This document shows positions 14,743-42,815 of a stretch of 64,000 nt of DNA, piece by piece; within the stretch, counting starts at the first letter, position 1; each line of letters begins with the position of its first letter. The notes beneath the pieces were generated by a model that saw only the letters and a list, made by a program, of their open reading frames with translations, did no database searches and was not told the origin of the DNA. The stretch is from Paramoeba atlantica (Eukaryota; Protista; Discosea): contig CDRNVI010000085.1 in the NCBI GenBank assembly GCA_977017575.1, positions 29,013 to 93,012 of the forward strand, read 5' to 3'. The translations under genes were made by a program, and so were the position numbers.

Positions 14743-14771
14743 AAACAAAAAACGCGTAAAGGAAAAAGATT

Positions 14772-14807
14772 CAACAAGGTACAGAAACTGTATCTTTATC
14801 GTTAAAG
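14772..14807 (-). other. Spliced-leader exon copy (36 nt) spliced onto gag mRNA sequence
   Basis: CTTTAACGATAAAGATACAGTTTCTGTACCTTGTTG contains the kinetoplastid SL core CAGTTTCTGTAC..TTG. It is followed by AATCTTTTTCC, not by a GT donor. Confidence 0.9.
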
Positions 14808-14835
14808 ACAAAAAAACGCGTAAAGGAAAAAGATT

Positions 14836-14870
14836 CTACAAGTAAGTAATCAGTAAATATGTAAATTTTC
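14836..14870 (-). promoter_or_regulatory. Trans-splice acceptor (AG at 14837-14836) in repeat A; second copy at 10072-10073
   Basis: TTTACTGATTACTTACTTGTAG|AATCTTTTTCCTTTACGCG. The same downstream sequence follows the SL at 14771. Confidence 0.85.
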
Positions 14871-23067: not shown

Positions 23068-25491
23068 GCACTGCCGCATCTGCCAACGCGTGAAGTACGA
23101 ACCTCGTTTTTTTTTTTTGCTCCAATCGTCCAATTAAATTGTCATGCAGTTTTTACATGAAAATAAGCATGCAGGTCACTCACCCTAGTTGTTTAGTACC
23201 TTGTTATGTTTGGTACCGGGCAGTGCCGTAGTTCGATCAAAAAACGTTTTTTTTTTTTTTTTAATATCCTAAAAGAATATGACATATTTTTTTTTTTGAT
23301 AACCTAATATATTATCCCATACCCCGCGCAGCAGGGAGCTGAGCGTCAAAGAAAAAAAAAAAAACCTGTGTGGCAGTCACCCTAGTTGTGTAGTACCTTG
23401 TTATATTCGGTACCGGATGGTGCCACAATCAAATCGAAACCGGACAGCAATAAAAGAATCTACAATGTGAAATGTAGAATAAGAAAACATGAAAATAAGC
23501 ATGCAGGTCACTCACCCTAGTTGTTTAGTACCTTGTTATGTTTGGTACCAGGTGGTGATAGAATCCATTTCATAAGACAGCAGGAAAAAACAGCAGGAAA
23601 AACGAACAAGATCTGGCGTGCAATTCAAGGCGTGCATAATATCTGGCGTGCAATATCTGGCGTGCAGTATCTGGCGTGCATAATATCAACAACAGAATGT
23701 ACTATTTTTGAAGCTTTGACTTGAAGCAAAAGCTAATCATAGTCGTAGACCTCCAACCCATTTTTCAGCCTGAATATATTGCCGCAATTGAGAAACTACT
23801 GCGTATGCAGAATATTTCTCTAACTCAAGCTGAAAGGCTTTTCGTGTTGGCGTATAATCTAGACCTGCCCTCTTTGCCAATGTTTTTAGTAGCTGTTTAG
23901 TCTCCTCGTGCAAGACCCCACAATCAGTAATCGCAATGCAACGGAAACTTTCGGGATCTAAGCCTTTCTCCTTCATGTATTTATTATTCTTTCTGTCTTG
24001 GGCACTCTGGAGCAAGTCATTGCTACTTTGCTTTCGGTAGCTACTGCAACACGTATGAACTACGGTTAAATCGTATAAAATTTCACCAACGTCGGGCCAC
24101 AAGATCGCAAGGTCTGGTCCGGATCTGATTCTACGAGCTCGGCATGGGTGTTGTTCTGCTGCTTCTGGGGAAATTGAACATTTGCACTTAGTGCAGAAGA
24201 ATGACGTGTGAATTCGTGGCTCGATTGCACAAGGGAGACTGGCTTTGGAACACAGATCGGAAAGATATCGCACCAAATGAGAGTGTTTGCGTGTACAGTT
24301 CATTCCAGCGCATCGTGAGCAACCGGCTACGTGAGGAATGATTTTGCATGCCGACTCTACAATTCCACATCCCGGGCATGTGATATTGCATGGAGCGTTA
24401 CTGAGTTCGATTCCGAGGCGCATCATAAGAGTGTACCGAAAGAGGTAGGGATTTACGTAATTGTTCGTCGAGTCTAAATGTGTGCTCGCTTCTTTTGTGC
24501 GTTTCGTGATATCTTGAAATCTGGGATTCTCGTTCAAATCCATTGCTACCTTTTCATGTTCACTCTTCATATTCTTTGACAGCTGGGTACGTACCGCCTG
24601 AGCTTTCGATCCAGGACTACTTACTTGTTTCTTGGCTGAGCTATCTACTGGAGCATTAGAGGGCTGATTTCGCTCTTCAATAGATTTGCGTGAGGCTTCG
24701 AAAAAGTAACGTTGCTTTAGAACCGTTGAGGTAATTCCAAGGCCTCCCATTTTACATGGAAGGGCGGCGAGTTTGAGGGCTTCACTGTCAGCACCACACC
24801 ATTTCTTTAGAATCTTGTGTATTTCTTCATCAAAGGTCTGTGCTAGGAGAATAGAGGCTCCAGGTTTGTGGACTCGCAGATGGTAGTCGTGGCGCGGTAA
24901 TGTGCATCTCTTGAGAATCGCGAGCGATAAGTTGCTTGGGCCCATAATCTTGAGTCTTCGGAAAAGACATTTATGTTTCTCCAGCTTTTCCAACAGTTTT
25001 CGCTCCACTGCTTTATTGTGTCCTATGTACGCCCCAAGAACTTTGATGGAATCCACGCAGTCTTCCACCCCAAGCTCTCGAAGTGACATGCCTCGGTGGT
25101 TAGTGGTGTTATTGCCTTGGAAAAGTTCGCACTTGCGAGAATTTATTTCGAGGTTTAATTCACTTGTCAGTTCTTTAAAATGAAGAAAAGCAACTTCCAA
25201 TGATGATTCATTCTTAGAACTCATGGTAACATCGTCTTGGTAGGCTCGAATGGTGACGTCTGGATAGAGTTTCGCAATTTTCTTCAACGGACCTTGCAGC
25301 ACGGCGCAGAAATATACTGACGAGAGTGCTGATCCCTGTCGGACTCCTGATGAGCTTTCAATTACGGAATGCAAGGTATTGTTCGCGAAGAAAAGAAGTT
25401 CCGATGATTGCCCGTACTCAAAATAAAACATTCGCATGAAATATTTGAATACTGGATACTCAAGAAGAGCTTGCTCTATTGATGTGCGATG
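23068..25491 (-). mobile_element. 3' half of CRE-clade element B2 (5' half at 38779-39421 and 39942-40932)
   Basis: ORF 23737..25491 (HRTSIEQALL...GGLRL) continues from AYNTP at 38779. The pieces total 945+630+1755 = 3330 nt = 1109 aa in frame. The 3' UTR stops 27 nt short of the poly(A) seen in the tandem copies. Confidence 0.8.
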
Positions 25492-25507
25492 TTTCTGTAC
25501 CTTGTTG
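25491..25507 (+). other. Truncated SL exon copy (17 nt) at the 5' end of element B1
   Basis: GTTTCTGTACCTTGTTG, then a 22-nt T-rich UTR, then ATG at 25530. Confidence 0.85.
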
Positions 25508-27416
25508 TTTTATTTTTATTTTTACTCGTATGAACACGCAAAACGCCGAACAAATTATGAAGAGGGGATCAACGCTCGATAAGCCAAAGAAAACCCCCCG
25601 TGTGAGAGTTATTATGAGTGCAAAGGAATTATCGCCGAACTGGGCCGACCACGAGGTACATAGCAACTACCGACGGCCAAGGATAAAATTTTCTGATGCA
25701 AGGCCGACCTCACAAGAGTCCGAGAATGATTCCGATGAGGAGAGAGATTCATCCAAACATCCTGAAGATTGCGAAGGCGCCTCCGATGATACCACAGGCG
25801 AAGAATCTGATGTGATGTCGGTGGATGAGGAAGTGACGTCGATGGATGGGGAAGTGGGGCAACGCAAAAACGAAGAATTTCCGAAGGCTCCAGATCACAT
25901 CAACACCATTATCCATGAATGGGGCAAAGGAACGACGTGCGAACTGAGATGGGGATTCAAAAAAGAGCAGAAATATGCCTCAAAAGGAGTAGTGGTGAAG
26001 AGGACTGTCCGAAAAGGTATTGTAAAGCTGAAGGTGGAATACAAGCCAAGCGACGGAGACAATGGACCCTCTGGTTTTATCTACCTTCCTCCATCTGCAA
26101 AAGTGAAAATTTGGTCCATTAAGGCACTGTGTCTAAATAAAGTAAAAAGCGTCGATGTGTCAATGGAAAACACTGGAAATTCAGAGAACAAGGAGGAGCG
26201 AGGCATTGAGGGAACATCTGATTTGGAACCGCTGCCAAAGATGGCACAAATTGATCCAACGTTTGCCGTCCATGTAATCGCGATTTTTCGTTCCATTATT
26301 AAAGCGTACCCGAAGGCTCAGACAGAAGCAGAAAGAACTGTTATCTGGCACAAACTCCTCGATACACCACGGGACTCTTTGGCCACAGTCCGTCTAAACT
26401 ACCTACGGCGCCAGAGCTCCGTACAGCGTCGAGGGAGACGTGAGTGGGAAACTATCGATACGAACATTACCGAGGAAGAACGACTTGTACAAGAAGTAGA
26501 CAAACGATCAATTCGAAATGCATTGCAAGCAGCAAAGGCAGGAAATCTTGGAAAAGCTACCCGCATACTCGACAATGTTTACAAGGACTCTGCTCTTCCA
26601 CTCTGGGAAAAGGTTGACAAACTTCGAGATCTACACCCCAAAGGCCCTACACCTCAAACTTCTGATCGAGACTTCCCGCGAATTGCGATATTGGAACCTT
26701 CTGAACTTCGTCTAGCGACTGAAAAATTGTCAAAAGGTGCAGCTCCTGGCCCGACAGGTCTGAGTGAAAGCATGATGCGAATTTTAGTGGAGGACGAAGA
26801 ATCCTGCCTTTCACTCTGCCACATGCTGAGAGACGTCATAAATGGGGAAGTTGCGAAAAGTGTCCGAGTAAGATTAACACGATGCAGAATGATAGCCCTT
26901 GCAAAACCGAACAATGGAATACGACCGGTTGCAATGGGGGAAACGCTGCTAAAAATTTGCGGGTGTATCCTCCTTGAGCGCCATGCGAACTCCTTGTCAG
27001 ACATATTCCAACTTTTTTTTTTATAGGAGATTTCAACGCCCCCTTAACGCTTATATCAAAAAAGTGGTCTTAATCAAACAAGCAAGCAAAGTAAGATGAA
27101 TTTTTTTTTTTTTTTTTTTTTTGCGAGACGCTTGGAAAAAAAATAAGCGTTCCAGGAAATGAAACCACCAACTCCTCAATAATCTAACGTAAATTGAAGG
27201 TATTTTTTTTTTTTTTTATTCTATTAGAATTTCCCTGAGTTGGTGATCTCAGGCTACTATTGAAAAGGGAATGTTATGGTCTTTCGGTTTTATATAACAA
27301 TATCTTCATATAGTCGAACGTGTACGAGCTGCCGTCATATGTTAAGAATTTGGGTTTTCTCAAATACCCGTAAATTTAGATTACAAATTTTACTTTAAAG
27401 AGACTTTAAATATATC

Positions 27417-30400
27417 TTATAGGCGCAATTCACTCATCCACTTCTCTGCTGGAATGTAGTCTCGGAGCTGCGACACTACCGTGTACGCTGACATTTTTTC
27501 GATTTCGAGCTGGAAAGCATTGCGCACGCTTTCATATTTAAGTTTCGCTCTTTGTGAGAGAGCCTTCAGCAACGCCTTAGTATCGTCATGTAGAAGGCCG
27601 CAATCTGTTGCAGCCAGACACTTAAACGAATCGCTATCGACACCCTTCTCAGTAACGTATTTCTTATATTTTCTGTCGGAGACCTGCTGCATAAGGGCAG
27701 AGCTGGTGTGTTTTGCGTAGCTTGAGCAGCACGTATGTACTATTGTGAAGTCGTAGAGTACCTCACCCATGTGAGGCCACATGATGGCCAGATCTGGACC
27801 TGAACGAATACGGCGTGCTTTGCAAGGATGTTGCGCGGCGACATCTGCTGAGATAGTGCACTTACATTTAGTGCAATGATACGAGGAGTAGATGCGGGGT
27901 TCGATCACGCTAGGAAGGCCTGCTTTTGAGCACAACTCTGAGAGATACCGGACGATATGTGAATGTTTGCGTGTGGAGTTCATCCCGGAGCATCGGGAGC
28001 ATCCAGCAACGTGGGGAATAATGGTGGAGGGTGATTCTTGATTAGAACAGCCGGGGCATGTTACTTTGGCCGGTGCCTTAGGCAAGCCAATTCCTAAGCG
28101 CATCATGAGCGTATATCGGAATAGGTATGGGTTAACGTAGTTGCTGGTGTTTTCGAGGTGGATATTAGCCTCTTTAGTGCGTTTTATGATGTTCGCTGCG
28201 GTGGAGTCTTTCTGTATTTCTGTCAATTGTTTTTCGTGAGCTTGACTCATGATCTTCTTAAGCGATTTGCGGGCCTTTTCTGCGCGGCTCTGAATTTTAG
28301 CTTTGCTCTTGTCATTGCCTTGCGAATCTACCGGAGCTTTATTGGGTTCCAAGTGCTCTTCAATAGATTCTCGGGCTGCTGCGAAGTAGTGCTGCTGTTT
28401 CAGAGTGCAAGAAGTCAGTCCTAATCCACCTAATTTTTGCGGGAGAGCTGCGAGCTTAAGTGCCTGGGCGTCCGCGCCGCACCATTTCTGCAAGACTTCG
28501 TGTACGTGGCTTTCAAAAGAATGTGCCAGACGCCGAGTGGCCTCCGGGCGGTGAACTCTCAGATGATAGTCTTGACGTGGAATTGTACATCGGCGAAGAA
28601 TCGCGAGAGAAAGGTTACTGGGGCCCATGAGAAGTAAACGGCGGAAAAGGCATTTATGCTTACTGAGTTTGCGCAGGAGAAGATCCTCTACCACATTATC
28701 TTTCCCGATATAGGCTCCCAGAATCTTGATCGAATCAGTGCAAAGCTTGACGCCTAGATTATGCAAAGAGAACGGTTCGTATGTGGTATTTTTCTGGAAA
28801 AATTCGCATTTCTGAAAGTTGACGCGTAGATTGAGCTCGCCTGTGATTTCACGTAAGTGCAGGAACGCAGCTTCAAGTGACGGTACGTTTGTAGAGCTGA
28901 GAGTCACATCGTCTTGATATGCTCGTATTTTGACGTCGGGGTATAAGCTTGCGATCTCGCGAATGGGACCGTGTAAAAGTGCACAGAAGTACATGGAGGA
29001 TAATGATGAGCCTTGTCGAATTCCTGACGAACTTTCGATGGTCGCGAAAAGAGCGTTGTGTGCGAAAAACAAAAGTTCGGATGAGAGGCCGTATTCAAGG
29101 TAAAACAGTCGCATAAAAGGTTTGAACACAGGATTCTCTAGTAGTGCTTGTGTTATGGCGTCGCGTCGTGGAGTGTTGTATGCGTTCGTGAAATCTACCG
29201 TAATCAATGCGCATCCATCCTCGTATTCTTGTAGTAGCTCATGCACTATTGATTCACATGCGCTCTTGTGGAGAACGCCCCGCTGCATAGGCGAAAAGTA
29301 TTTTCGTAGTGCACATTCATGTCGCTCGAGTAAAATGGATCCGCAGATTTTTAGGATCGTCTCCCCCATGGCGACTGGCCGTATACCGTTTTGTGGCTTC
29401 GGAAGAGCAATAATTCGGCAACGAGTGAGACGCTTCCGCACGCTTACAGGCACGTCGCCATTGATAACGTCGCGAATCATATGGCATAATGAAAGGCATG
29501 CTTCTTCATCTTCAACAAGCAAACGCATCATGCTCTCACTAAGCCCGCTTGGTCCCGGAGATGCCCCTCGCGCAAGTTTTTCGACTGCAAGGCGGAGTTC
29601 TGATTTATCTACAACGCCGATCCGTGGAAAGTCAGCTTCCGGAATTTCAATACTAGGCCCCTCGGGATGCAAATCGCGAAGTTTCTGTAATTTTTCATGC
29701 GCTGTAAGATTGGAGACCTTGTAAACGTTGTCGAGAATTCGAGTGGCTTTCCCGATGTTTCCAGCTCGAGCGGTCGTTAAAGCATTCTTGATCGAGCGAC
29801 GGTCGACGCCAAGTTCTTCCCTTTGTTCTATGCTGAGTGTTTCGTTTTCCGATGGATCCGCTTGTTTGTTTATGTGTCCGACTCGTTGATTTTGCCGAGA
29901 AAGTTGACGAATAGTAGCGAGCGAGTCTCTTGGTGCGTTCAAAAATTTATGCCAGATAGCTGTTTTCTCAGAGTCAAGTTCTACCGATGGATACCCACGA
30001 AGTATGGCTCGGAAGATGGCGACTACATGGATTGAAAAAGATGAATCAATGGGTACCATCGTGGGCAGCGGCTCGAGATCACTTTGACCATTTTCATCGC
30101 TAGACACGTTGTCGGCGTGTTCTTCTAAATTCCGCGTAATTGTTTCGACTTTGATCAGTTTCGTGGCTCGTATCGAACAGATTCTGATCCTGTTTGTGTG
30201 TGGAAGATAAAGAAAGCCACTGGGACCTTTGCTGCCTTGAGCTGGATTGTAAGAGATTTTGACTTTGACCATTCCTTTTCGTGAGGTCCTACCTACGACG
30301 ATGCCTTTCGACGTGTAATTCACCGTGTCTTGTCGGAAGCCCCACTCGATAACACATTCCGTGCCTTTGCCCCACTTTGCTACCATGTTGTGCACATGAT

Positions 30401-30956
30401 CCGGTGCTTTGGAAAGAGCACTTCTGTTTGCCAGATCTGCTATGACCTCGTTATCGCTGTCAAGAGACATATCTTCGCTCTCGTCTTCGTAATGTTCCTC
30501 TTCCGAGTCAATATCCGGTGTTGTCTCTTGTTGTGGTTCTTGACGTGGCTGTTCGTCGAAAGATGTCAATCGAAAGGTCTTAGGCGTGATTTTGATTTTG
30601 ATTTTGTCGCTGTGCGCACTGTTCTGTTCGCCGTGATCAGCCCAGTCTTTTGGCAGAGGTGTAGATCCGACGATTCGAATTCTTGGGGTTTTCTTTGGTT
30701 TGGACATTTCATGCGTAATTCGGCCATCTCCTGTGGTGAGATCGGGTAAGTCTGACGCCGTGTGATTTCCGGAGCGTTCCTTCATTCCCTCTTTCCGCGA
30801 AACTTGTAGAATCTTGATTATTGAGCCGTCTGAGGAAACCGTTGTTGTGCTCTTCTTTTCTTTGCCACGCTTTCCTTTTTCACGTGATTTCTCTGTTGTA
30901 CGACTTGTCTTCAGGTCTGAATTTTTGCTCACGACTGAGCGGGAAGGGCGTGTCAT
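27417..30956 (-). CDS. Intact RT-RLE polyprotein (1179 aa)
   Basis: ATG at 30956 (MTRPSRS). RT motifs PKPQNGIRPVAMG, VDFTNAYN, GIRQGSSLS, AYQDD. CPGC..H..C finger, second CTKC..HPC motif, RSGPDL, LYDFTIVH, KYKKY. Confidence 0.95.
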   Translation of the reverse strand: MTRPSRSVVSKNSDLKTSRTTEKSREKGKRGKEKKSTTTVSSDGSIIKILQVSRKEGMKERSGNHTASDLPDLTTGDGRITHEMSKPKKTPRIRIVGSTPLPKDWADHGEQNSAHSDKIKIKITPKTFRLTSFDEQPRQEPQQETTPDIDSEEEHYEDESEDMSLDSDNEVIADLANRSALSKAPDHVHNMVAKWGKGTECVIEWGFRQDTVNYTSKGIVVGRTSRKGMVKVKISYNPAQGSKGPSGFLYLPHTNRIRICSIRATKLIKVETITRNLEEHADNVSSDENGQSDLEPLPTMVPIDSSFSIHVVAIFRAILRGYPSVELDSEKTAIWHKFLNAPRDSLATIRQLSRQNQRVGHINKQADPSENETLSIEQREELGVDRRSIKNALTTARAGNIGKATRILDNVYKVSNLTAHEKLQKLRDLHPEGPSIEIPEADFPRIGVVDKSELRLAVEKLARGASPGPSGLSESMMRLLVEDEEACLSLCHMIRDVINGDVPVSVRKRLTRCRIIALPKPQNGIRPVAMGETILKICGSILLERHECALRKYFSPMQRGVLHKSACESIVHELLQEYEDGCALITVDFTNAYNTPRRDAITQALLENPVFKPFMRLFYLEYGLSSELLFFAHNALFATIESSSGIRQGSSLSSMYFCALLHGPIREIASLYPDVKIRAYQDDVTLSSTNVPSLEAAFLHLREITGELNLRVNFQKCEFFQKNTTYEPFSLHNLGVKLCTDSIKILGAYIGKDNVVEDLLLRKLSKHKCLFRRLLLMGPSNLSLAILRRCTIPRQDYHLRVHRPEATRRLAHSFESHVHEVLQKWCGADAQALKLAALPQKLGGLGLTSCTLKQQHYFAAARESIEEHLEPNKAPVDSQGNDKSKAKIQSRAEKARKSLKKIMSQAHEKQLTEIQKDSTAANIIKRTKEANIHLENTSNYVNPYLFRYTLMMRLGIGLPKAPAKVTCPGCSNQESPSTIIPHVAGCSRCSGMNSTRKHSHIVRYLSELCSKAGLPSVIEPRIYSSYHCTKCKCTISADVAAQHPCKARRIRSGPDLAIMWPHMGEVLYDFTIVHTCCSSYAKHTSSALMQQVSDRKYKKYVTEKGVDSDSFKCLAATDCGLLHDDTKALLKALSQRAKLKYESVRNAFQLEIEKMSAYTVVSQLRDYIPAEKWMSELRL

Positions 30957-30983
30957 AACGATTGAGATAATAAGAAAATAAAT

Positions 30984-31016
30984 CAACAAGGTACAGAAAC
31001 TGTATCTTTATCGTTA
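30984..31016 (-). other. Spliced-leader exon copy (33 nt)
   Basis: TAACGATAAAGATACAGTTTCTGTACCTTGTTG lies between the TSD and the 5' UTR. It is not followed by GT. Confidence 0.92.
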
Positions 31017-32080
31017 TTCCAACCGATCCAAAGAGGCATATTACAAAAGAATGCATGTGAGTCCATTGTACATGAACTTTTGGAAGAGCATGAAGCTGGA
31101 GCCACAATTTTGACGATTGACTTCAAGAATGCATACAATACGCCACAACGTACGGCAATAGAAGAAGCGCTCCTTCAATACCCGGTATTCAAACACTTTA
31201 TGCGAATGTTCTATTTTGAATATGGTCAACCATCGGAACTTTTATTTTTCGCCAACGACTCATTACATTCCGTGATCGAAAGCTCGTCTGGGGTCCGTCA
31301 AGGATCAGCACTCTCTTCGGTTTATTTTTGCGCACTGCTACAAGGTCCTTTGAAAGAAATTGCGAAGCTCTATCCAGAGGTTACTATCAGAGCCTACCAG
31401 GACGATGTGACGATGAGCTCCAAAAATGAGTCATCTTTGGAAGTTGCGTTCCTTCACCTCAAAGAACTAGCAAGTGGTCTGAATCTTGAAATTAATTCCC
31501 GTAAATGCGAAGTATTCCAAGGCTACAGTTCAACGAATAATCGAGGGATGGATCTCAAGGAACTTGGGGTGGAAGACTGTGTGGATTCCATCAAGGTCCT
31601 AGGAGCATACATCGGGCATAATAAAGCCGTTGAACGAAAGCTCTTGGAGAAGTTAGGGAAACATAAATGTTTATTTCGAAGACTTCGCGCTATGGGTCCC
31701 AGCAACTTGTCACTAGCGATTCTCAAGCGATGTACCATACCCCGTCATGATTACCACCTTCGAGTCCATAAACCTGGAGCTTCGTTTCTTCTTGCCCAGG
31801 TGTTCGACGAGGAAATCCATGAGATCCTAAAGAAATGGTGTGGTGCAGATAGTGAAGCACTTAAACTCTCTGCCCTCCCATGTAAAATGGGAGGTCTAGG
31901 AATCACCTCAACCGTTCTAAAGCAACGCTACTTTTTCGAAGCGTCCCTAAAATCTATTGATGAGCGATCGAAACCCATTAATGCTCCGGTAGATAAGGGA
32001 GGCAAGAAACAAGCCGACAGCACACGAACGAATTCACAAGCTGCACGCACCCAGCTAAGAAAGAGCATGAAGAATGAACA

Positions 32081-32628
32081 ATATGTCAGGGCATCCGGCT
32101 TATGTCGGATGATGGGACTTAGCGATCCCAGCTTCCCGAGCTAACTCACCCGGCGTCGCATAACAAGACGCTAAAGAACTAGGGTGAATACGATGAATAC
32201 AATATGGATGACACTACCCGGTGCCAGTAAAACGAGGCACTAAATAATTAGGGTGGATGTCATTCTGGCAACGTAGAATGGGTGGCACCGCCCGGTACCG
32301 AATATAACAAGGTACTAAGAAACTAGGGTGGGTGCCATTCGGGCTAATCTTTGGAATGTGTTTGTGTTTTTTTTTATCCACCCTCAAAAGATAGAGTGGT
32401 TTTTTTTGGTCAAGGGGCGCCTTATTTGCATTACCTAAGGCGCAGGGGTATAGCGCACCCCACCTCCCTAGCTGTAACCTAACTCCTCTCCAAACGGAGG
32501 TCAGCCGTAGCTTGCTATGGCTGGCTCTCCGGATACGTCGCAAGACGTATTCGGACTGCCCGTTTGGGGAGTTGAGGGGCCATAACTTTTCGGAGTCAAA
32601 AGGCCCAATACATCATCATCATCATCAT
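32081..32628 (+). mobile_element. Non-coding element with RTE-type (CAT)n tail (SINE or truncated LINE 3' UTR)
   Basis: TSD CATGAAGAATGAACA at 32066-32080 and 32629-32643. The last ~150 nt are nearly identical to 42639-42784 of the RTE-like LINE. Confidence 0.9.
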
Positions 32629-36001: not shown

Positions 36002-37762
36002 GGGTAGGGGGGACCTTCGATGAGTACTCATCGAAAGTCTACAACTTTCCGTGAGTCTCATCGAGAGTCTACAACTTTCGATGAGTACTCATCGAAGCGT
36101 TTTTGAGCGACCCTAATAGAGATTTTCGAGATTTTTTTATTACTCACCGAAGCGTTTGTGGCAAACAAACTGAAGCGTTTGCATAAAACAAATTCACAAT
36201 CCTTCGGAAGGGGTGGACACAGGTTCCCAGTGCGCTACCCGCGTGCTGGAGCGTGCGGGGCGCCAAAAGATATTATTATGTCCCATGGTCAAAAGAGAAT
36301 CCGAACTCCTAATCGATAATAGAAGCTAAGTCAGACTGCATAATTTACAAAAAGAAAACATATGATCTACTCATAGTCTGATGGCCATCAACGTAACGGA
36401 AACATGATACCTTAAAAGTTTACGAAAAGAATTGTACAATGGAAATTTTGATTTCTGAGAATTATATTTACGTTAGTTGGCCGACGGGCATTGTACGTTT
36501 GTTATTCATAAACTAGTTTATATAGTGACACAAAGCATTATACAGTGAACTGGTAATAGAGCGCGTTTTTATCCTTTGAAACTTTTTGGCGGGTGGTCCC
36601 CGCGTGGACACCCGTTCGAGAAAGGGAGGGAAGGGAGTTCTCTCCAGGAAAAAGTTCATGAGGTATATAAAATAGATTTGATACTTACTTCGCGAAGTTG
36701 ATATTACAGTACTGGTGAAGATAATGTCTTTTACTCTGTTGTCCATGATGGATGTTATATTTCGGTAGCTCTGTAGTTCTACAGATTAAACATTACAGTT
36801 TACATACGCTTACTATATCTGATTGACTATATGTTTTTCTTCCGGAAGTGCAATTCACGTTAAAACCGGCAAAATAGCTGAAGAATCCGTCCTACAAAAA
36901 ACAACAGGGCTACGCTCACAGTTGGGCCTTGCCTCTGGACAATCCTGCGGAAGGGGTAGACGGGTTGGGGGTACGTTCGTTGAGTTCTCAACGAACGGAA
37001 ATTTACGGTGGAAGTCAAGGACTTTTGTGGAACACCCAAGATTTTTTTTTGATTTTCCTTTTCCGTGCGTTCAGTATCCTACACTTCACTACATACGTTG
37101 ACAACGCCTCCGTAGCGAAAACTACGAAATTCAGTGAGCTTCGCAAATTGCTTCCCACTAACGACGCACAGGGGAATCCTACGCGGGGTACGGCTCAGGC
37201 CCGCTCACGCGGGCCCTCGCCGTTTCGCGGCCGCGCGCACCCCCGCTCACGCGGGGGCCCCCGCGCGGCCAAAATGGGTACTAAAATTTGTTATCAAGGT
37301 AGTTGAGCTTCGCAAATTGCTTCCCACGAATCTAGAGAGAAGCACACGTACAATAATCTTTAACGATAAAGATACAGTTTCCGTACCTTGTTGATTATTT
37401 ACTTTTTTTTACCTTTCATGGGAGTGTTCACACGCTCCCAAGCAAAAGAATCAGGAGTAGTCCTGAGATTTTGCCGCTCCCTCCTGCCCGCCGGAAAAAG
37501 AAGGCCGTGATGCCAACTCCTCCTCCGCCCGCCGTGCCAATATCCACCACCTCCGCATGGAGCGCACGGGTCGCCAAAAAATATTATTATGTCCCAGGGC
37601 TACGCTCACAGTTGGCCCTTCGCAAAAAATTGATAAAATACGAAAAATTGAAAAAGTCAAAAACACCTTCGATGAGTACTCATCGAAAGTCTACAACTTT
37701 CCGTGAGACTCATCGAAAGTCTACAACTTACGATGAGTACTCATCGAAGGTCCCCCCTAGCC
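36002..37762. mobile_element. Non-autonomous DNA transposon-like element (32-bp TIRs, 8-bp TSD), Merlin-like termini
   Basis: TIR GG(G/C)TAGGGGGGACCTTCGATGAGTACTCATCG at both ends. TSD GAAAAACA at 35994-36001 and 37763-37770. Excision restores the host reading frame. No transposase ORF seen. Confidence 0.85.
37355..37393 (+). other. Longest SL exon copy (39 nt, one T>C change) joined to the 5' end of a family C-like ORF
   Basis: AATCTTTAACGATAAAGATACAGTTTCCGTACCTTGTTG, then a T-rich UTR and ATG GGA GTG TTC ACA CGC TCC (MGVFTRS; compare MGVVTRS at 40961). The exact 5' boundary is uncertain. Confidence 0.85.
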
Positions 37763-38778: not shown

Positions 38779-40932
38779 TGGCGTGTTGTACGCATTCTTA
38801 AAATCGATAGTCAAAATGGTGGCTCCTGCTTCGTGTTCTTCCAACAGCTCGTGGACGATAGATTCACATGCATTTTTCTGTAGGATTCCCCGCTGGATAG
38901 GTTGGAATATTTTTGTTAAAGAACTCGCATGTCGCTCAAGAAGTATACATCCACAAATTTTTAGCAAAGTATCCCCCATGGCAACAGGTCGTATTCCATT
39001 GTTAGGTTTTGCAAGGGCGATGATTCTGCATCGAGTGAGTCTTACACGCACACTGTTAGCAACTTCGCCGTTTATGACGTCGCGCAACATATGACAGAGC
39101 GAGAGGCATGATTCTTCATCTTCAACTAATATCGTCATCATGCTCTCGCTCAATCCTGTTGGACCTGGTGCTGCACCTTTTGACAGTTTCGCTGTAGCAA
39201 AGCGTAGTTCAGATGGTTCCAAAATTGCTATTCGCGGAAACTCTTGATCCATGTTTTGTGGTGCAGGACCTTTCGGATGCAGCTCTCGCAGCTTGTCAAC
39301 CTTCGCGCTGAGTGGAAGAGCAGAGTCTTTGTACACATTGTCAAGAATCCGCGTGGCTTTACCTACGTTTCCTGCCTTCGCTGACCGTAACGAATTCCGA
39401 ATCGATCTCTTGTCTGCATCTGACGCAAAACTCCATTCGCGATACGGAAAAAATAGTGTTTGTTCGCTCCCTATTTTTAGCTTTCCAGGGCTAGGGTCAT
39501 AATTCGGAGAGACACGAGCTCGTTGAAGCCGAGGTTTAGCCCTTTGAAGCTGAGGAGCCAAGTCCGCTCAAAGGTATAACACCCTAGAAGACTTGGTCCG
39601 TTGAAGCTGAGGAGCCAAAAACCGTTGAAGCTGAGACTTGATACTCCCGAATATGGCACTAGTTTCTCCTTCGGGAGACGTGGGGCATTCGGAATGAATC
39701 AGGGCTAACACCCAGTTCGCCGAATAGCGAGGGCTTAGCTCTCCACGTGCCCGGGGAAGGAAGTCCTAGGATCTGCGGAGGCAGCAAATCGCTCACCGAT
39801 TTGCATACCCTATTCGAAACTCGCAAGAGTTTCGATGATCCAGCGACCAGGCTCCTTCCCCCAAGTTCCCCTGCTTTCTCAGGGGAGGCGACATCCTTGT
39901 ACTAGGGTAACCGCCTGTAATCACTATCACTATCACTATCACTTGTCTGCATCTAATTCCCTGCGTTCTTCCTCGCTCATATTTTCATTTAAGGTTTCCC
40001 ATTCGCGTCTTCCACGTTTCACCGAACTCTGGCGTCGCAGATATGTTTCCCGAATCGTCGCTAAGGAATCTCGAGGGGTATCTAGAAGCTTGTGCCAGAC
40101 GCTGGTTTTTTCTGTTTCTGTTTTGGCTTTCGGGTATGCTTTGATAATGGATCGAAAAATCGCGACAACGTGAACGGCGAAGGTTGGGTCAATTTCAGCC
40201 ATCTTCGGTAGCGGTTCCAAGTCAGACGTTTGTTCCTCATTGTCGCGCTCCATCTTGCTTTCAGAATTTTGAGAGCTTTCCATTGACACATCAATACTTT
40301 TTATCCTGTTTAAACTGCACGCTTGAATAGACCAAATTTTCACTTTTGCCGAAGGTGGAAGATAGATGAAACCTGTTGGTCCGTTATCTCCTTCGCGTGG
40401 TTTATATGCCACTTTGAGTTTCACCATCCCTTTTCTCACAGTCCTCTTCACAACTTCTCCTTTCGAGTCGTATTTCTGTTCTTGCTTGAAAGCCCATCGC
40501 AGTTCGCACGTCGTTCCTTTGCCCCACTCGTGGATAATAGTATTGATGCGATCTGGAGCCTTAGGAAACTCTTCCTCGTCTCTGCGATCCACTTTCCCAT
40601 CCAACGACATCACGTCAGAATTCTCATCTGAACTGTTCTCTGAAGTGCATTCGGAATTTTCAGAATTACTTCCTCGATCAGAATCTCCCTCGGACAGATA
40701 AGTGCTTTGTGAGTTCGATGGCGAATCTGCGAATTTTATCCTAGTTCGACGGTAGGTGCTGTACACTTCGTGGTCTGCCCAATTCGGTGATAATTCTTTA
40801 GCGTTCATAACCACTCTCACCCTGGGGATTTTCTTCGGTTTGTCTAGGTTTCTTCCCCTCACTTGTGCGGCGTTTTCGGTGTTCATACTTCTAATCGTTT
40901 AACGAAAAAAATGGTCAACAAGGTACAGAAAC
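38779..40932 (-). mobile_element. 5' half of CRE-clade element B2 with a truncated SL (40916-40932)
   Basis: GTTTCTGTACCTTGTTG, 29-nt UTR, ATG at 40886 (MNTENAAQ). ELDADK (39942) joins RSIRNSL (39408) across the insertion below. Confidence 0.88.
39422..39941 (+). mobile_element. Short insertion ending in (ATCACT)n; probable LINE 3' end or SINE of another family
   Basis: TSD CTTGTCTGCATCT at 39409-39421 and 39942-39954. Tandem-repeat tail, internal GTTGAAGCTGAG repeats and several hairpins. Confidence 0.85.
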
Positions 40933-42781: not shown

Positions 42782-42815
42782 CATAGAAATGTAGAAAGTA
42801 AGGTAATAATTCAAC

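What the first reader, a model, noticed from the sequence alone, without database searches (positions are those of the whole stretch)
27004..31023. Complete TSD-SL-ORF-poly(A)-TSD unit: CRE-clade elements transpose as trans-spliced mRNA
Seen: a 9-bp TSD bounds a 33-nt SL, a 27-nt UTR, an intact 1179-aa ORF and a poly(A). The element has no promoter-like 5' region of its own. SL remnants also sit 22-29 nt before the ATG at 25491, 37355 and 40916, and possibly GTTG at 42812-42815, each cut at a different or shared SL position. Established: the known kinetoplastid CRE/SLACS/CZAR elements insert into SL RNA genes. Here the flanks are other retroelements, and no SL intron follows any poly(A). Inference: this family carries the SL as part of its template. 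A new copy has lost its upstream AG and polypyrimidine acceptor, so it may need the genomic SL or a flanking acceptor for expression. This parallels the relict SLs of recycled dinoflagellate mRNAs.
Basis: partly seen in the sequence, partly recalled or inferred. Interest (0 to 1): 0.9.

Follow-up and report, generated by a model that had tools for sequence, protein, structure and literature searches.

The report
Jumping gene headed by spliced leader
An intact R2-like retrotransposon in a kinetoplastid-type genome starts with a DNA copy of the cell's own spliced leader, which shows that it copies itself from mature trans-spliced mRNA and does not target spliced-leader genes as its known trypanosome relatives do.

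Summary
On the minus strand, a 9-bp target-site duplication (27004-27012 and 31015-31023) bounds 31-33 nt of the host spliced leader (SL), a 27-nt UTR, an intact 1179-aa ORF and a poly(A) tail. Seven uninterrupted paralogues of the host element give the empty site.

The SL matches the exon of the genome's real SL RNA genes (about 40 copies, in arrays with 5S rRNA). Another roughly 790 SL copies head retroelements.

Thirteen near-identical sister copies have different flanks and different SL cut points. The SL therefore belongs to the RNA template and is not target DNA.

New here:
- A 5'-truncated daughter on contig C4 carries 58 nt of this window's flank behind the old tail. This copy was therefore transcribed and retrotransposed (3' transduction).
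- 79 loci, including copies of the host family and relatives of this family, carry double or triple SL relics like those of dinoflagellates.

The protein is R2-like (RT, CCHC and a restriction-like endonuclease). The "CRE-clade" label is unproven: there is no SL-gene targeting and no N-terminal zinc finger.

How daughter copies regain a leader is unresolved, and no usable RNA data were available. The scan has already noted SL-headed elements elsewhere in this genome. I found no published report for kinetoplastids.

The parts
31015..31023 (-). Target-site duplication, copy on the 5' side of the element (GTTGGAATA on the minus strand). Its last 1-2 nt could equally be SL nt 6-7.
30984..31016 (-). 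DNA copy of the host spliced leader, nt 6/8-38 of 38, joined at its exact 3' end to the UTR.
   Evidence: Identical to the SL gene exon in L036.
30957..30983 (-). 27-nt pyrimidine-rich 5' UTR without any AG. There is no other 5' region.
27417..30956 (-). Intact ORF of 1179 aa plus stop codon. The N-terminal 430 aa hold only 2 Cys, so there is no zinc finger.
28779..29402 (-). Reverse transcriptase domain (aa 519-726).
   Evidence: RVT_1, E 8e-17
27669..28058 (-). CCHC knuckle and restriction-like endonuclease (aa about 967-1096). C, C, H, C, H, D and K are invariant among 13 relatives; E is nearly invariant.
   Evidence: In one search the profile aligns to the C-terminus of solved R2 proteins.
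27218..27416 (-). The family's own 3' UTR. The basal sister copies end here and go straight into poly(A).
   Evidence: L086, L087
27203..27217 (-). Internal A15, read as a fossil poly(A) tail of an earlier generation.
27123..27202 (-). 80-nt module B, shared to different extents by sister copies. Read as an earlier 3' transduction or a template-switch module.
27101..27122 (-). Internal A22, read as a second fossil tail. Copy L083 ends here.
27023..27100 (-). 78-nt module C. Its last 49 nt also occur at four other loci at 92% identity.
27013..27022 (-). Terminal poly(A), 10 nt.
27004..27012 (-). Target-site duplication, copy on the 3' side of the element.
26955..27012 (-). Flank (TSD plus 49 nt of host antisense). 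It reappears behind the A10 tail in the 5'-truncated daughter on contig C4, followed there by A33 and that copy's own TSD.
25491..25507 (+). SL relic (nt 22-38) heading the host retroelement, which this insertion splits at 27012/31024.
40916..40932 (-). SL relic (nt 22-38) heading another copy of the host family.

Best explanation
This is a recently active, non-site-specific non-LTR retrotransposon of the R2-like type: one ORF with a reverse transcriptase, a CCHC knuckle and a C-terminal restriction-like endonuclease. It has no 5' region of its own. Its transposition intermediate is the mature host-processed mRNA. The pre-mRNA is trans-spliced, so the 38-nt spliced leader is joined to a 27-nt UTR, and it is polyadenylated. 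The encoded protein nicks a target (here inside another retroelement) and copies the mRNA from the poly(A) tail up into the leader. It joins the cDNA with 1-2 nt of microhomology and leaves a 9-bp duplication. Each new copy therefore starts with the leader, either nearly complete or cut short. Cuts cluster near the cap (nt 2-7) and at the short palindrome of the leader core (nt 21-24). Shown: the anatomy, the empty site, the identity with the SL gene exon, the variable cut points, the R2-like protein, and the fact that this copy was itself transcribed past its tail and produced a daughter on C4. Inferred: that trans-splicing (and not another process) made the SL-UTR joint; that the internal A-runs record earlier generations; and that daughters regain a leader through AGs inside the relic or in the flank.
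For: Empty site in 7 paralogues, and a 9-nt overlap at the joint. The SL equals the exon of about 40 SL RNA genes arranged in tandem arrays; in the array tested the units also carry 5S rRNA. The SL 23-mer occurs 828 times in the genome and 0 times in the reversed control, and nearly all inspected hits read SL + short UTR + ATG. Thirteen copies 98-100% identical share the exact SL-UTR joint but differ in SL cut point and in flank. Subfamilies with unalignable UTRs still carry a perfect SL, so the leader is renewed and not simply inherited. Inverted snap-back pieces of the SL sit just upstream of cut points at nt 4-5, as expected at a template end (L028, L045). The daughter on C4 is 5'-truncated, has its own TSD ACTCG, carries the window's A10 plus 58 nt of window flank, and ends in A33. 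Double and triple SL relics occur at 79 loci against 0 in the control, in at least 14 families. The family profile matches solved R2 proteins at E about 1e-41 from the RT to the C-terminus.
Against: There are no RNA data: the only possible RNA run is held as contigs and covers nothing but the leader. No source copy with a polypyrimidine-AG acceptor in place of the SL was found, although only 40 of 632 candidates were scored. All four long copies of this family start at SL nt 5-7, while most other families reach nt 2-3. That could mean a truncated leader is being inherited. The new copy has no AG between its SL relic and the ATG, so its own route to a translatable mRNA is unexplained.
Confidence: 0.85

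Rival explanations
1. The SL is hard-wired. It was captured once and is now inherited as ordinary element sequence. Transcripts start further upstream, and the 5' ends reflect only truncation of the cDNA.
For: The long copies of this family all start at nt 5-7 and never at nt 1-3. The copy lacks an acceptor AG yet still produced a daughter. Thirteen of 15 host-family copies start at nt 22-24.
Against: No copy carries parental flank upstream of its SL. The SL stays perfect while the neighbouring UTRs of subfamilies have diverged beyond alignment. Unrelated families, including non-coding ones, all carry it at the same joint. Relic chains show that leaders were added again. Snap-back pieces mark a real template end.
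Confidence: 0.08
2. The SL is a cDNA chimera. The reverse transcriptase reaches the 5' end of an unspliced or degraded element RNA and jumps to another RNA that ends with the leader (the free SL exon) or to an SL-bearing RNA, as in U6/L1 chimeras.
For: R2-type enzymes are known to jump from template end to template end (established knowledge, not tested here). Partial 5' SL pieces lie upstream of full SLs (L007, L010, L025, L116). Poly(A) directly abuts the SL at many loci. Most relic chains have no intervening letters.
Against: Every copy of a family has the same UTR start. That needs a fixed RNA 5' end, which only splicing provides. The joint always lies at the exon's last base, and no SL intron letters follow it in any inspected retrocopy. 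Free SL exon is a rare intermediate.
Confidence: 0.05
3. The SL is target DNA: a CRE/SLACS-type element that inserted into an SL RNA gene.
For: Known kinetoplastid elements with this enzyme type do this (PMC12278014).
Against: The empty site is another retroelement's ORF and holds no SL. The SL lies inside the TSD. Its 3' end joins the UTR and its 5' part is the missing one. No SL or intron follows the tail. Cut points vary. Even within an SL array, the inserted element sits in the spacer.
Confidence: 0.02

Closest known systems
CRE clade of trypanosomatids (CRE1, CRE2, SLACS, CZAR)
   Same: Kinetoplastid host. Single-ORF non-LTR element with RT, a restriction-like endonuclease and a poly(A) tail. 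Close link to the spliced leader.
   Different: CRE elements insert at one fixed position inside SL RNA genes (PMC12278014) and so borrow the gene's 5' end and promoter. This element inserts elsewhere, carries the 3' part of the leader joined to its UTR as in spliced mRNA, has a 9-bp TSD, and has no N-terminal zinc finger. RT phylogeny was not tested.
R2 retrotransposons (solved structures 9nl3, 9dou, 8gh6)
   Same: Best sequence match among solved structures, covering RT, linker, CCHC and the C-terminal endonuclease. Target-primed reverse transcription.
   Different: R2 targets 28S rDNA and is co-transcribed with rRNA. This family is dispersed and uses mRNA processing.
Relict spliced leaders of dinoflagellate retrogenes (PMC5585692, PMC6050394)
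   Same: DNA-encoded SL remnants at the 5' end of retrocopies. Chains of truncated relics behind a new leader.
   Different: In dinoflagellates the relics tag host retrogenes. Here they head the autonomous retrotransposons themselves and their non-coding partners, in a kinetoplastid, with TSDs and parent-daughter pairs visible.
L1 3' transduction in mammals
   Same: Read-through past the element's own tail carries flank sequence into the daughter, which identifies the parent locus.
   Different: Different enzyme class (APE-type L1). Here the poly(A) site is presumably set by kinetoplastid coupled processing.
ingi/L1Tc with the Pr77 internal promoter (PMC1874656); SL-bearing transposon transcripts in Hydra (PMC12220107)
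   Same: Both are answers to how a LINE in a trans-splicing host gets its 5' end. Hydra shows transposon RNAs with an SL.
   Different: L1Tc makes unspliced transcripts from its own promoter. For Hydra the passage read reports SL on transposon RNA only and does not mention genomic copies.

Membership tests
Non-LTR retrotransposons with restriction-like endonuclease (R2-like group) | Reverse transcriptase domain | tested here: met
   Pfam RVT_1, aa 519-726, E 8e-17.
Non-LTR retrotransposons with restriction-like endonuclease (R2-like group) | CCHC motif and PD-(D/E)XK-type endonuclease C-terminal to the RT | tested here: met
   Motifs visible in the translation. C, C, H, C, H, D and K are invariant and E nearly invariant in 13 relatives. 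The profile aligns to R2 proteins up to their C-terminus, E 3e-41. The fold itself was not modelled.
Non-LTR retrotransposons with restriction-like endonuclease (R2-like group) | Footprint of target-primed reverse transcription: TSD, 3' poly(A), 5' truncations | tested here: met
   9-bp TSD and empty site. A10 tail. Truncated sister copies.
CRE clade (CRE1/2, SLACS, CZAR) | Insertion at a fixed position within SL RNA genes | tested here: not met
   The empty site is a retroelement ORF. Thirteen copies lie in 13 different flanks. There is no SL intron in the window.
CRE clade (CRE1/2, SLACS, CZAR) | One or two zinc-finger-like motifs, present in most copies (PMC12278014) | tested here: not met
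   Only two cysteines occur in the first 430 aa. The C-terminal CCHC is present.
CRE clade (CRE1/2, SLACS, CZAR) | RT groups with CRE elements in a phylogeny of R2, NeSL, R4, Hero and Utopia | not tested
   No named CRE/SLACS sequence was returned by any tool.
Retrocopies of trans-spliced mRNA (relict-SL class) | Host SL at the 5' end, joined at the exon's last base to the transcript body | tested here: met
   Identical to the SL gene exon. The same joint occurs in all 13 copies.
Retrocopies of trans-spliced mRNA (relict-SL class) | Chains of relict leaders from repeated cycles | tested here: inconclusive
   Not present in this copy or its 12 sisters. Present at 79 loci in the genome, including relatives (L097, L109) and the host family.
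Retrocopies of trans-spliced mRNA (relict-SL class) | The RNA form (SL-UTR mRNA) exists | not testable with these tools
   No usable RNA run.

The most novel reading that the evidence does not exclude
In this free-living-type kinetoplastid, promoter-less R2-like retrotransposons, their non-coding partners and tyrosine-recombinase elements all depend on host trans-splicing for their 5' end. The leader relic would then act as a portable restart module: its two internal AGs (after nt 16 and nt 22) or a flank AG let a daughter be spliced again, and the chain of relics counts generations. An SL-complementary cDNA end could also be the evolutionary starting point for the SL-gene targeting of CRE/SLACS elements in trypanosomatids.
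Probability: 0.2. Interest if true: 0.85.

Novelty: new variant of a known kind. Interest (0 to 1): 0.68.

Why it matters
Known kinetoplastid LINEs solve the 5'-end problem in one of two ways: an internal promoter (ingi/L1Tc) or insertion into SL genes (CRE/SLACS). This genome shows a third way, the use of the finished trans-spliced mRNA. It leaves a readable record in DNA: leader relics mark the exact RNA 5' end, relic chains and stacked tails record successive generations, and transduced flanks identify parents. Three questions become testable from sequence plus one long-read RNA data set. How does a promoter-less, acceptor-less copy get expressed in a polycistronic genome? Where do reverse transcriptases stop on the capped, modified leader? 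How might SL-gene targeting have arisen?

Tried and rejected
- RNA evidence: one run search and one lay of reads. Only assembled contigs were available. The possible RNA run covers just the leader, so expression, 5' ends and double-SL transcripts could not be tested. No contig independently bridges the flank-SL joint of this copy.
- Source copy with AG in place of the SL: L054 reads ..CAAG directly before the UTR. However, its upstream sequence is another high-copy repeat (13 places at 99-100% identity), so it is most likely a copy truncated to the last SL base. Rejected as a master copy.
- SL followed by GTA: 237 hits looked like SL genes. Only about 40 continue with the real intron (GTATGAG). 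The rest belong to a non-coding family whose body happens to start with GTAC.
- Naming the clade: the homologue search, cluster look-up, atlas search and two contig look-ups returned no named CRE/SLACS relative. The distant relatives L091 and L092 have no SL upstream.
- A single-sequence search of solved structures found nothing. The profile search did.
- CRE-type insertion in SL arrays: the wide spacing on C74 is caused by a 4.7-kb RT element in the spacer, 337 nt past the end of the SL exon. That element is itself headed by an 8-nt SL relic.
- 'SL+TTG' and 'SL+TG' in the host family can be explained by slippage in the TTGTTG repeat or by a point change. They are not counted as relics.
- The parent of this copy (element plus module C running on into flank) is not in the assembly.
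Full report
ANATOMY. The element lies on the minus strand. Read 5' to 3' it consists of:
- the flank ending in GTTGGAATA (31023-31015);
- the spliced-leader (SL) copy, down to 30984;
- a 27-nt UTR (30983-30957) that is pyrimidine-rich and has no AG;
- the ATG at 30956 and an uninterrupted 1179-codon ORF, with the stop codon at 27419-27417;
- about 200 nt of the family's own 3' UTR;
- A15, an 80-nt module, A22, a 78-nt module and A10 (27022-27013);
- GTTGGAATA again (27012-27004).

EMPTY SITE. The element splits another retroelement, whose ORF pieces are 25479-27026 and 31080-32144. That host element is itself headed by an SL relic at 25491-25507. Seven other copies of the host family read straight across the site with one copy of the 9-mer. 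Contigs of two DNA runs show the same uninterrupted form as a joint 27003->31015 with 9 shared letters; these contigs come from paralogues and are not alleles. The insertion and its 9-bp TSD are therefore certain. One or two letters (TA) at the 5' joint fit both the target and SL nt 6-7, which is a typical microhomology joint. The SL copy is therefore 31 to 33 nt long.

IS IT THE HOST LEADER? A 23-mer of the SL core occurs 828 times in the 45.7-Mb genome and never in the reversed control. About 40 copies continue with GTATGAG and stand in tandem arrays on contigs C97, C107, C11, C74 and C3. In the C3 array each unit also holds a 5S rRNA gene. The exon there pairs with the start of the intron in the predicted fold, as in classical SL RNAs. 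The exon is 38 nt long, and the element carries its last 31-33 nt without a mismatch. The remaining roughly 790 copies are not genes. In the 42 loci inspected, nearly all read SL, a short pyrimidine-rich UTR and an ATG, or head a non-coding repeat.

IS THE LEADER TARGET DNA OR TEMPLATE? Thirteen copies of this family, 98-100% identical, all share the same SL-UTR joint. They lie in unrelated flanks, and their SL is cut at about nt 5, nt 6-7 (three copies), nt 21 (two), nt 23 (two), nt 30-31 (three), nt 36 and nt 38. This is the pattern of 5' truncation of one RNA template. No SL intron sequence occurs in the window. Where an RT element does sit in an SL array (C74), it lies in the spacer 337 nt past the end of the SL exon and is itself headed by an 8-nt relic.

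Three further points indicate a real RNA 5' end and a leader that is renewed. First, inverted snap-back pieces of the SL sit just upstream of cut points at nt 4-5 (L028, L045). Second, subfamilies whose UTRs can no longer be aligned still carry a perfect leader. Third, the joint is always at the last base of the exon.

THE PROTEIN. Pfam finds only the RT domain. The C-terminus shows a CCHC motif followed by conserved H, E, D and K residues. A profile of the family matches solved R2 proteins at E about 1e-41, from the RT to their C-terminal endonuclease. The first 430 residues hold two cysteines, so there is no zinc finger. The family is thus R2-like in build. Placement in the CRE clade could not be tested, because no named CRE sequence was obtainable. 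The clade's hallmark, a fixed site in SL genes (PMC12278014), is not met.

THIS COPY HAS BEEN A PARENT. A copy on contig C4 ends with the window's A10 tail, then the window's TSD and 49 further letters of the host element's antisense strand, then A33. It is cut short 86 nt into the ORF. The whole unit lies between its own short duplication (ACTCG). A transcript of the window copy, or of an identical locus, therefore ran 58 nt past the old tail, was polyadenylated there and was reverse-transcribed into a new site. This is a 3' transduction. By the same logic, the internal A15 and A22 with their modules most likely record two earlier generations. Sister copies end at the first A-run (L086, L087), at the second (L083), or share the first module in part. 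The parents of those steps are not in the assembly, and pieces of the modules occur elsewhere. Template switching at the start of reverse transcription therefore remains a possible source of the modules.

HOW DOES A DAUGHTER GET A LEADER AGAIN? I found no source copy with an acceptor in place of the SL. The one candidate, L054, is better read as a copy truncated to the last SL base inside another repeat. Only 40 of 632 candidates were scored.

The genome nevertheless holds the predicted fossils. A search for an SL followed within 30 nt by a second SL end gives 79 loci against 0 in the control. In the 20 loci inspected and in 15 copies of the host family, a new leader is followed by a relic starting at one of these points:
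- nt 23 (TTTCTG.., the base after the internal ACAG);
- nt 17 (ATACAG.., after AAAG);
- nt 29;
- nt 31-32.

Sometimes a few foreign letters lie between leader and relic, and up to three relics stand in a row. At least 14 families show this, including relatives of the focal family (L097, L109). Leaders have therefore been added more than once in a lineage, as in dinoflagellate retrogenes (PMC5585692, PMC6050394).

Two routes fit the data. One is splicing at the two AGs inside a full relic, which predicts exactly the nt-17 and nt-23 classes. The other is splicing at an AG in the flank of a truncated copy, which fits the cases with intervening letters. A jump of the reverse transcriptase onto an RNA that ends with the leader cannot be excluded for the chains without intervening letters. 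None of the 13 copies of the focal family carries a chain.

CUT-POINT CLUSTERS. In the host family 13 of 15 outer leaders start at nt 22-24, and the focal family shows the same cluster. These positions lie in the loop of the short palindrome TACAG-TTT-CTGTA of the leader core. A hairpin in the RNA or in the first cDNA strand is a plausible cause, but this is inference.

LITERATURE. Seven full-text searches found no report of SL-headed retrotransposons in kinetoplastids. The Bodo saltans genome paper lists SLACS/CZAR as site-specific elements of the CRE clade (PMC4728078). Hydra transposon transcripts are known to carry an SL at the RNA level (PMC12220107). L1Tc uses an internal promoter and gives unspliced RNA (PMC1874656).

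EARLIER SCAN NOTES. Earlier notes of this scan describe SL-headed elements on other pieces of the same genome. They agree with this report but are not independent evidence.

LIMITS. There are no usable RNA data. Genome searches scored only part of the candidates. The clade is unresolved.

Noticed in passing
window 14772-14807 (-) with flanks 14743-14870; also L001-L004 (C1, period 5093 bp): An SL copy (nt 3-38) is flanked on both sides by copies of the same UTR-like sequence: UTR, SL, UTR, ATG. The C1 loci repeat this layout in a tandem array. It looks like a leader internalised in an element that replicates through terminal repeats. Another finding of the scan covers it.
   Followed up: no
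L005-L007, L015-L017, L021, L024, L029, L030 (contigs C1 and C2): Poly(A) runs directly abut the first bases of an SL, giving head-to-tail stacks of retrocopies. Either elements insert at older tails, or the reverse transcriptase jumps from one mRNA's 5' end to the next mRNA's tail.
   Followed up: no
L031-L035, L038-L042, L102: A non-coding repeat family (body starts GTACATTTT.., with a conserved hairpin-like stretch) is headed by SL pieces of varying length. It accounts for roughly 200 of the 237 'SL+GTA' hits that are not SL genes.
   Followed up: partly
L028 (C2:553082), L045 (C19:611920): Inverted copies of the SL core lie immediately upstream of the SL. These are snap-back products at the template end.
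   Followed up: partly
L113 3256-7944 (C74 SL array): A 4.7-kb RT-encoding element lies in the spacer of an SL array. It has a TSD of about 12-22 bp and an 8-nt SL relic at its head, but no poly(A) at its 3' end, so it is a different element type.
   Followed up: partly
L085, L088-L090; 5' flank of L044; window 27040-27075: Short shared motifs (..ATTTGATTGCTTGTTT.., ..TTAAGACCACTTTTT..) recur behind the A-runs of different copies in different combinations. Their source RNA or locus is unknown.
   Followed up: no
window 37093-37478: The SL at 37358 (one mismatch) lies inside a repeat unit that is shared with L019 at 97% identity over 386 nt, including 265 nt upstream of the SL. It is therefore not at an insertion boundary.
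   Followed up: partly
L116 (C54:14704-14874): The host-family leader with the most layers: a partial SL plus a repeated flank piece, then SL nt 5-38, six foreign letters, and two relics (nt 31-38 and nt 32-38) before the UTR.
   Followed up: no
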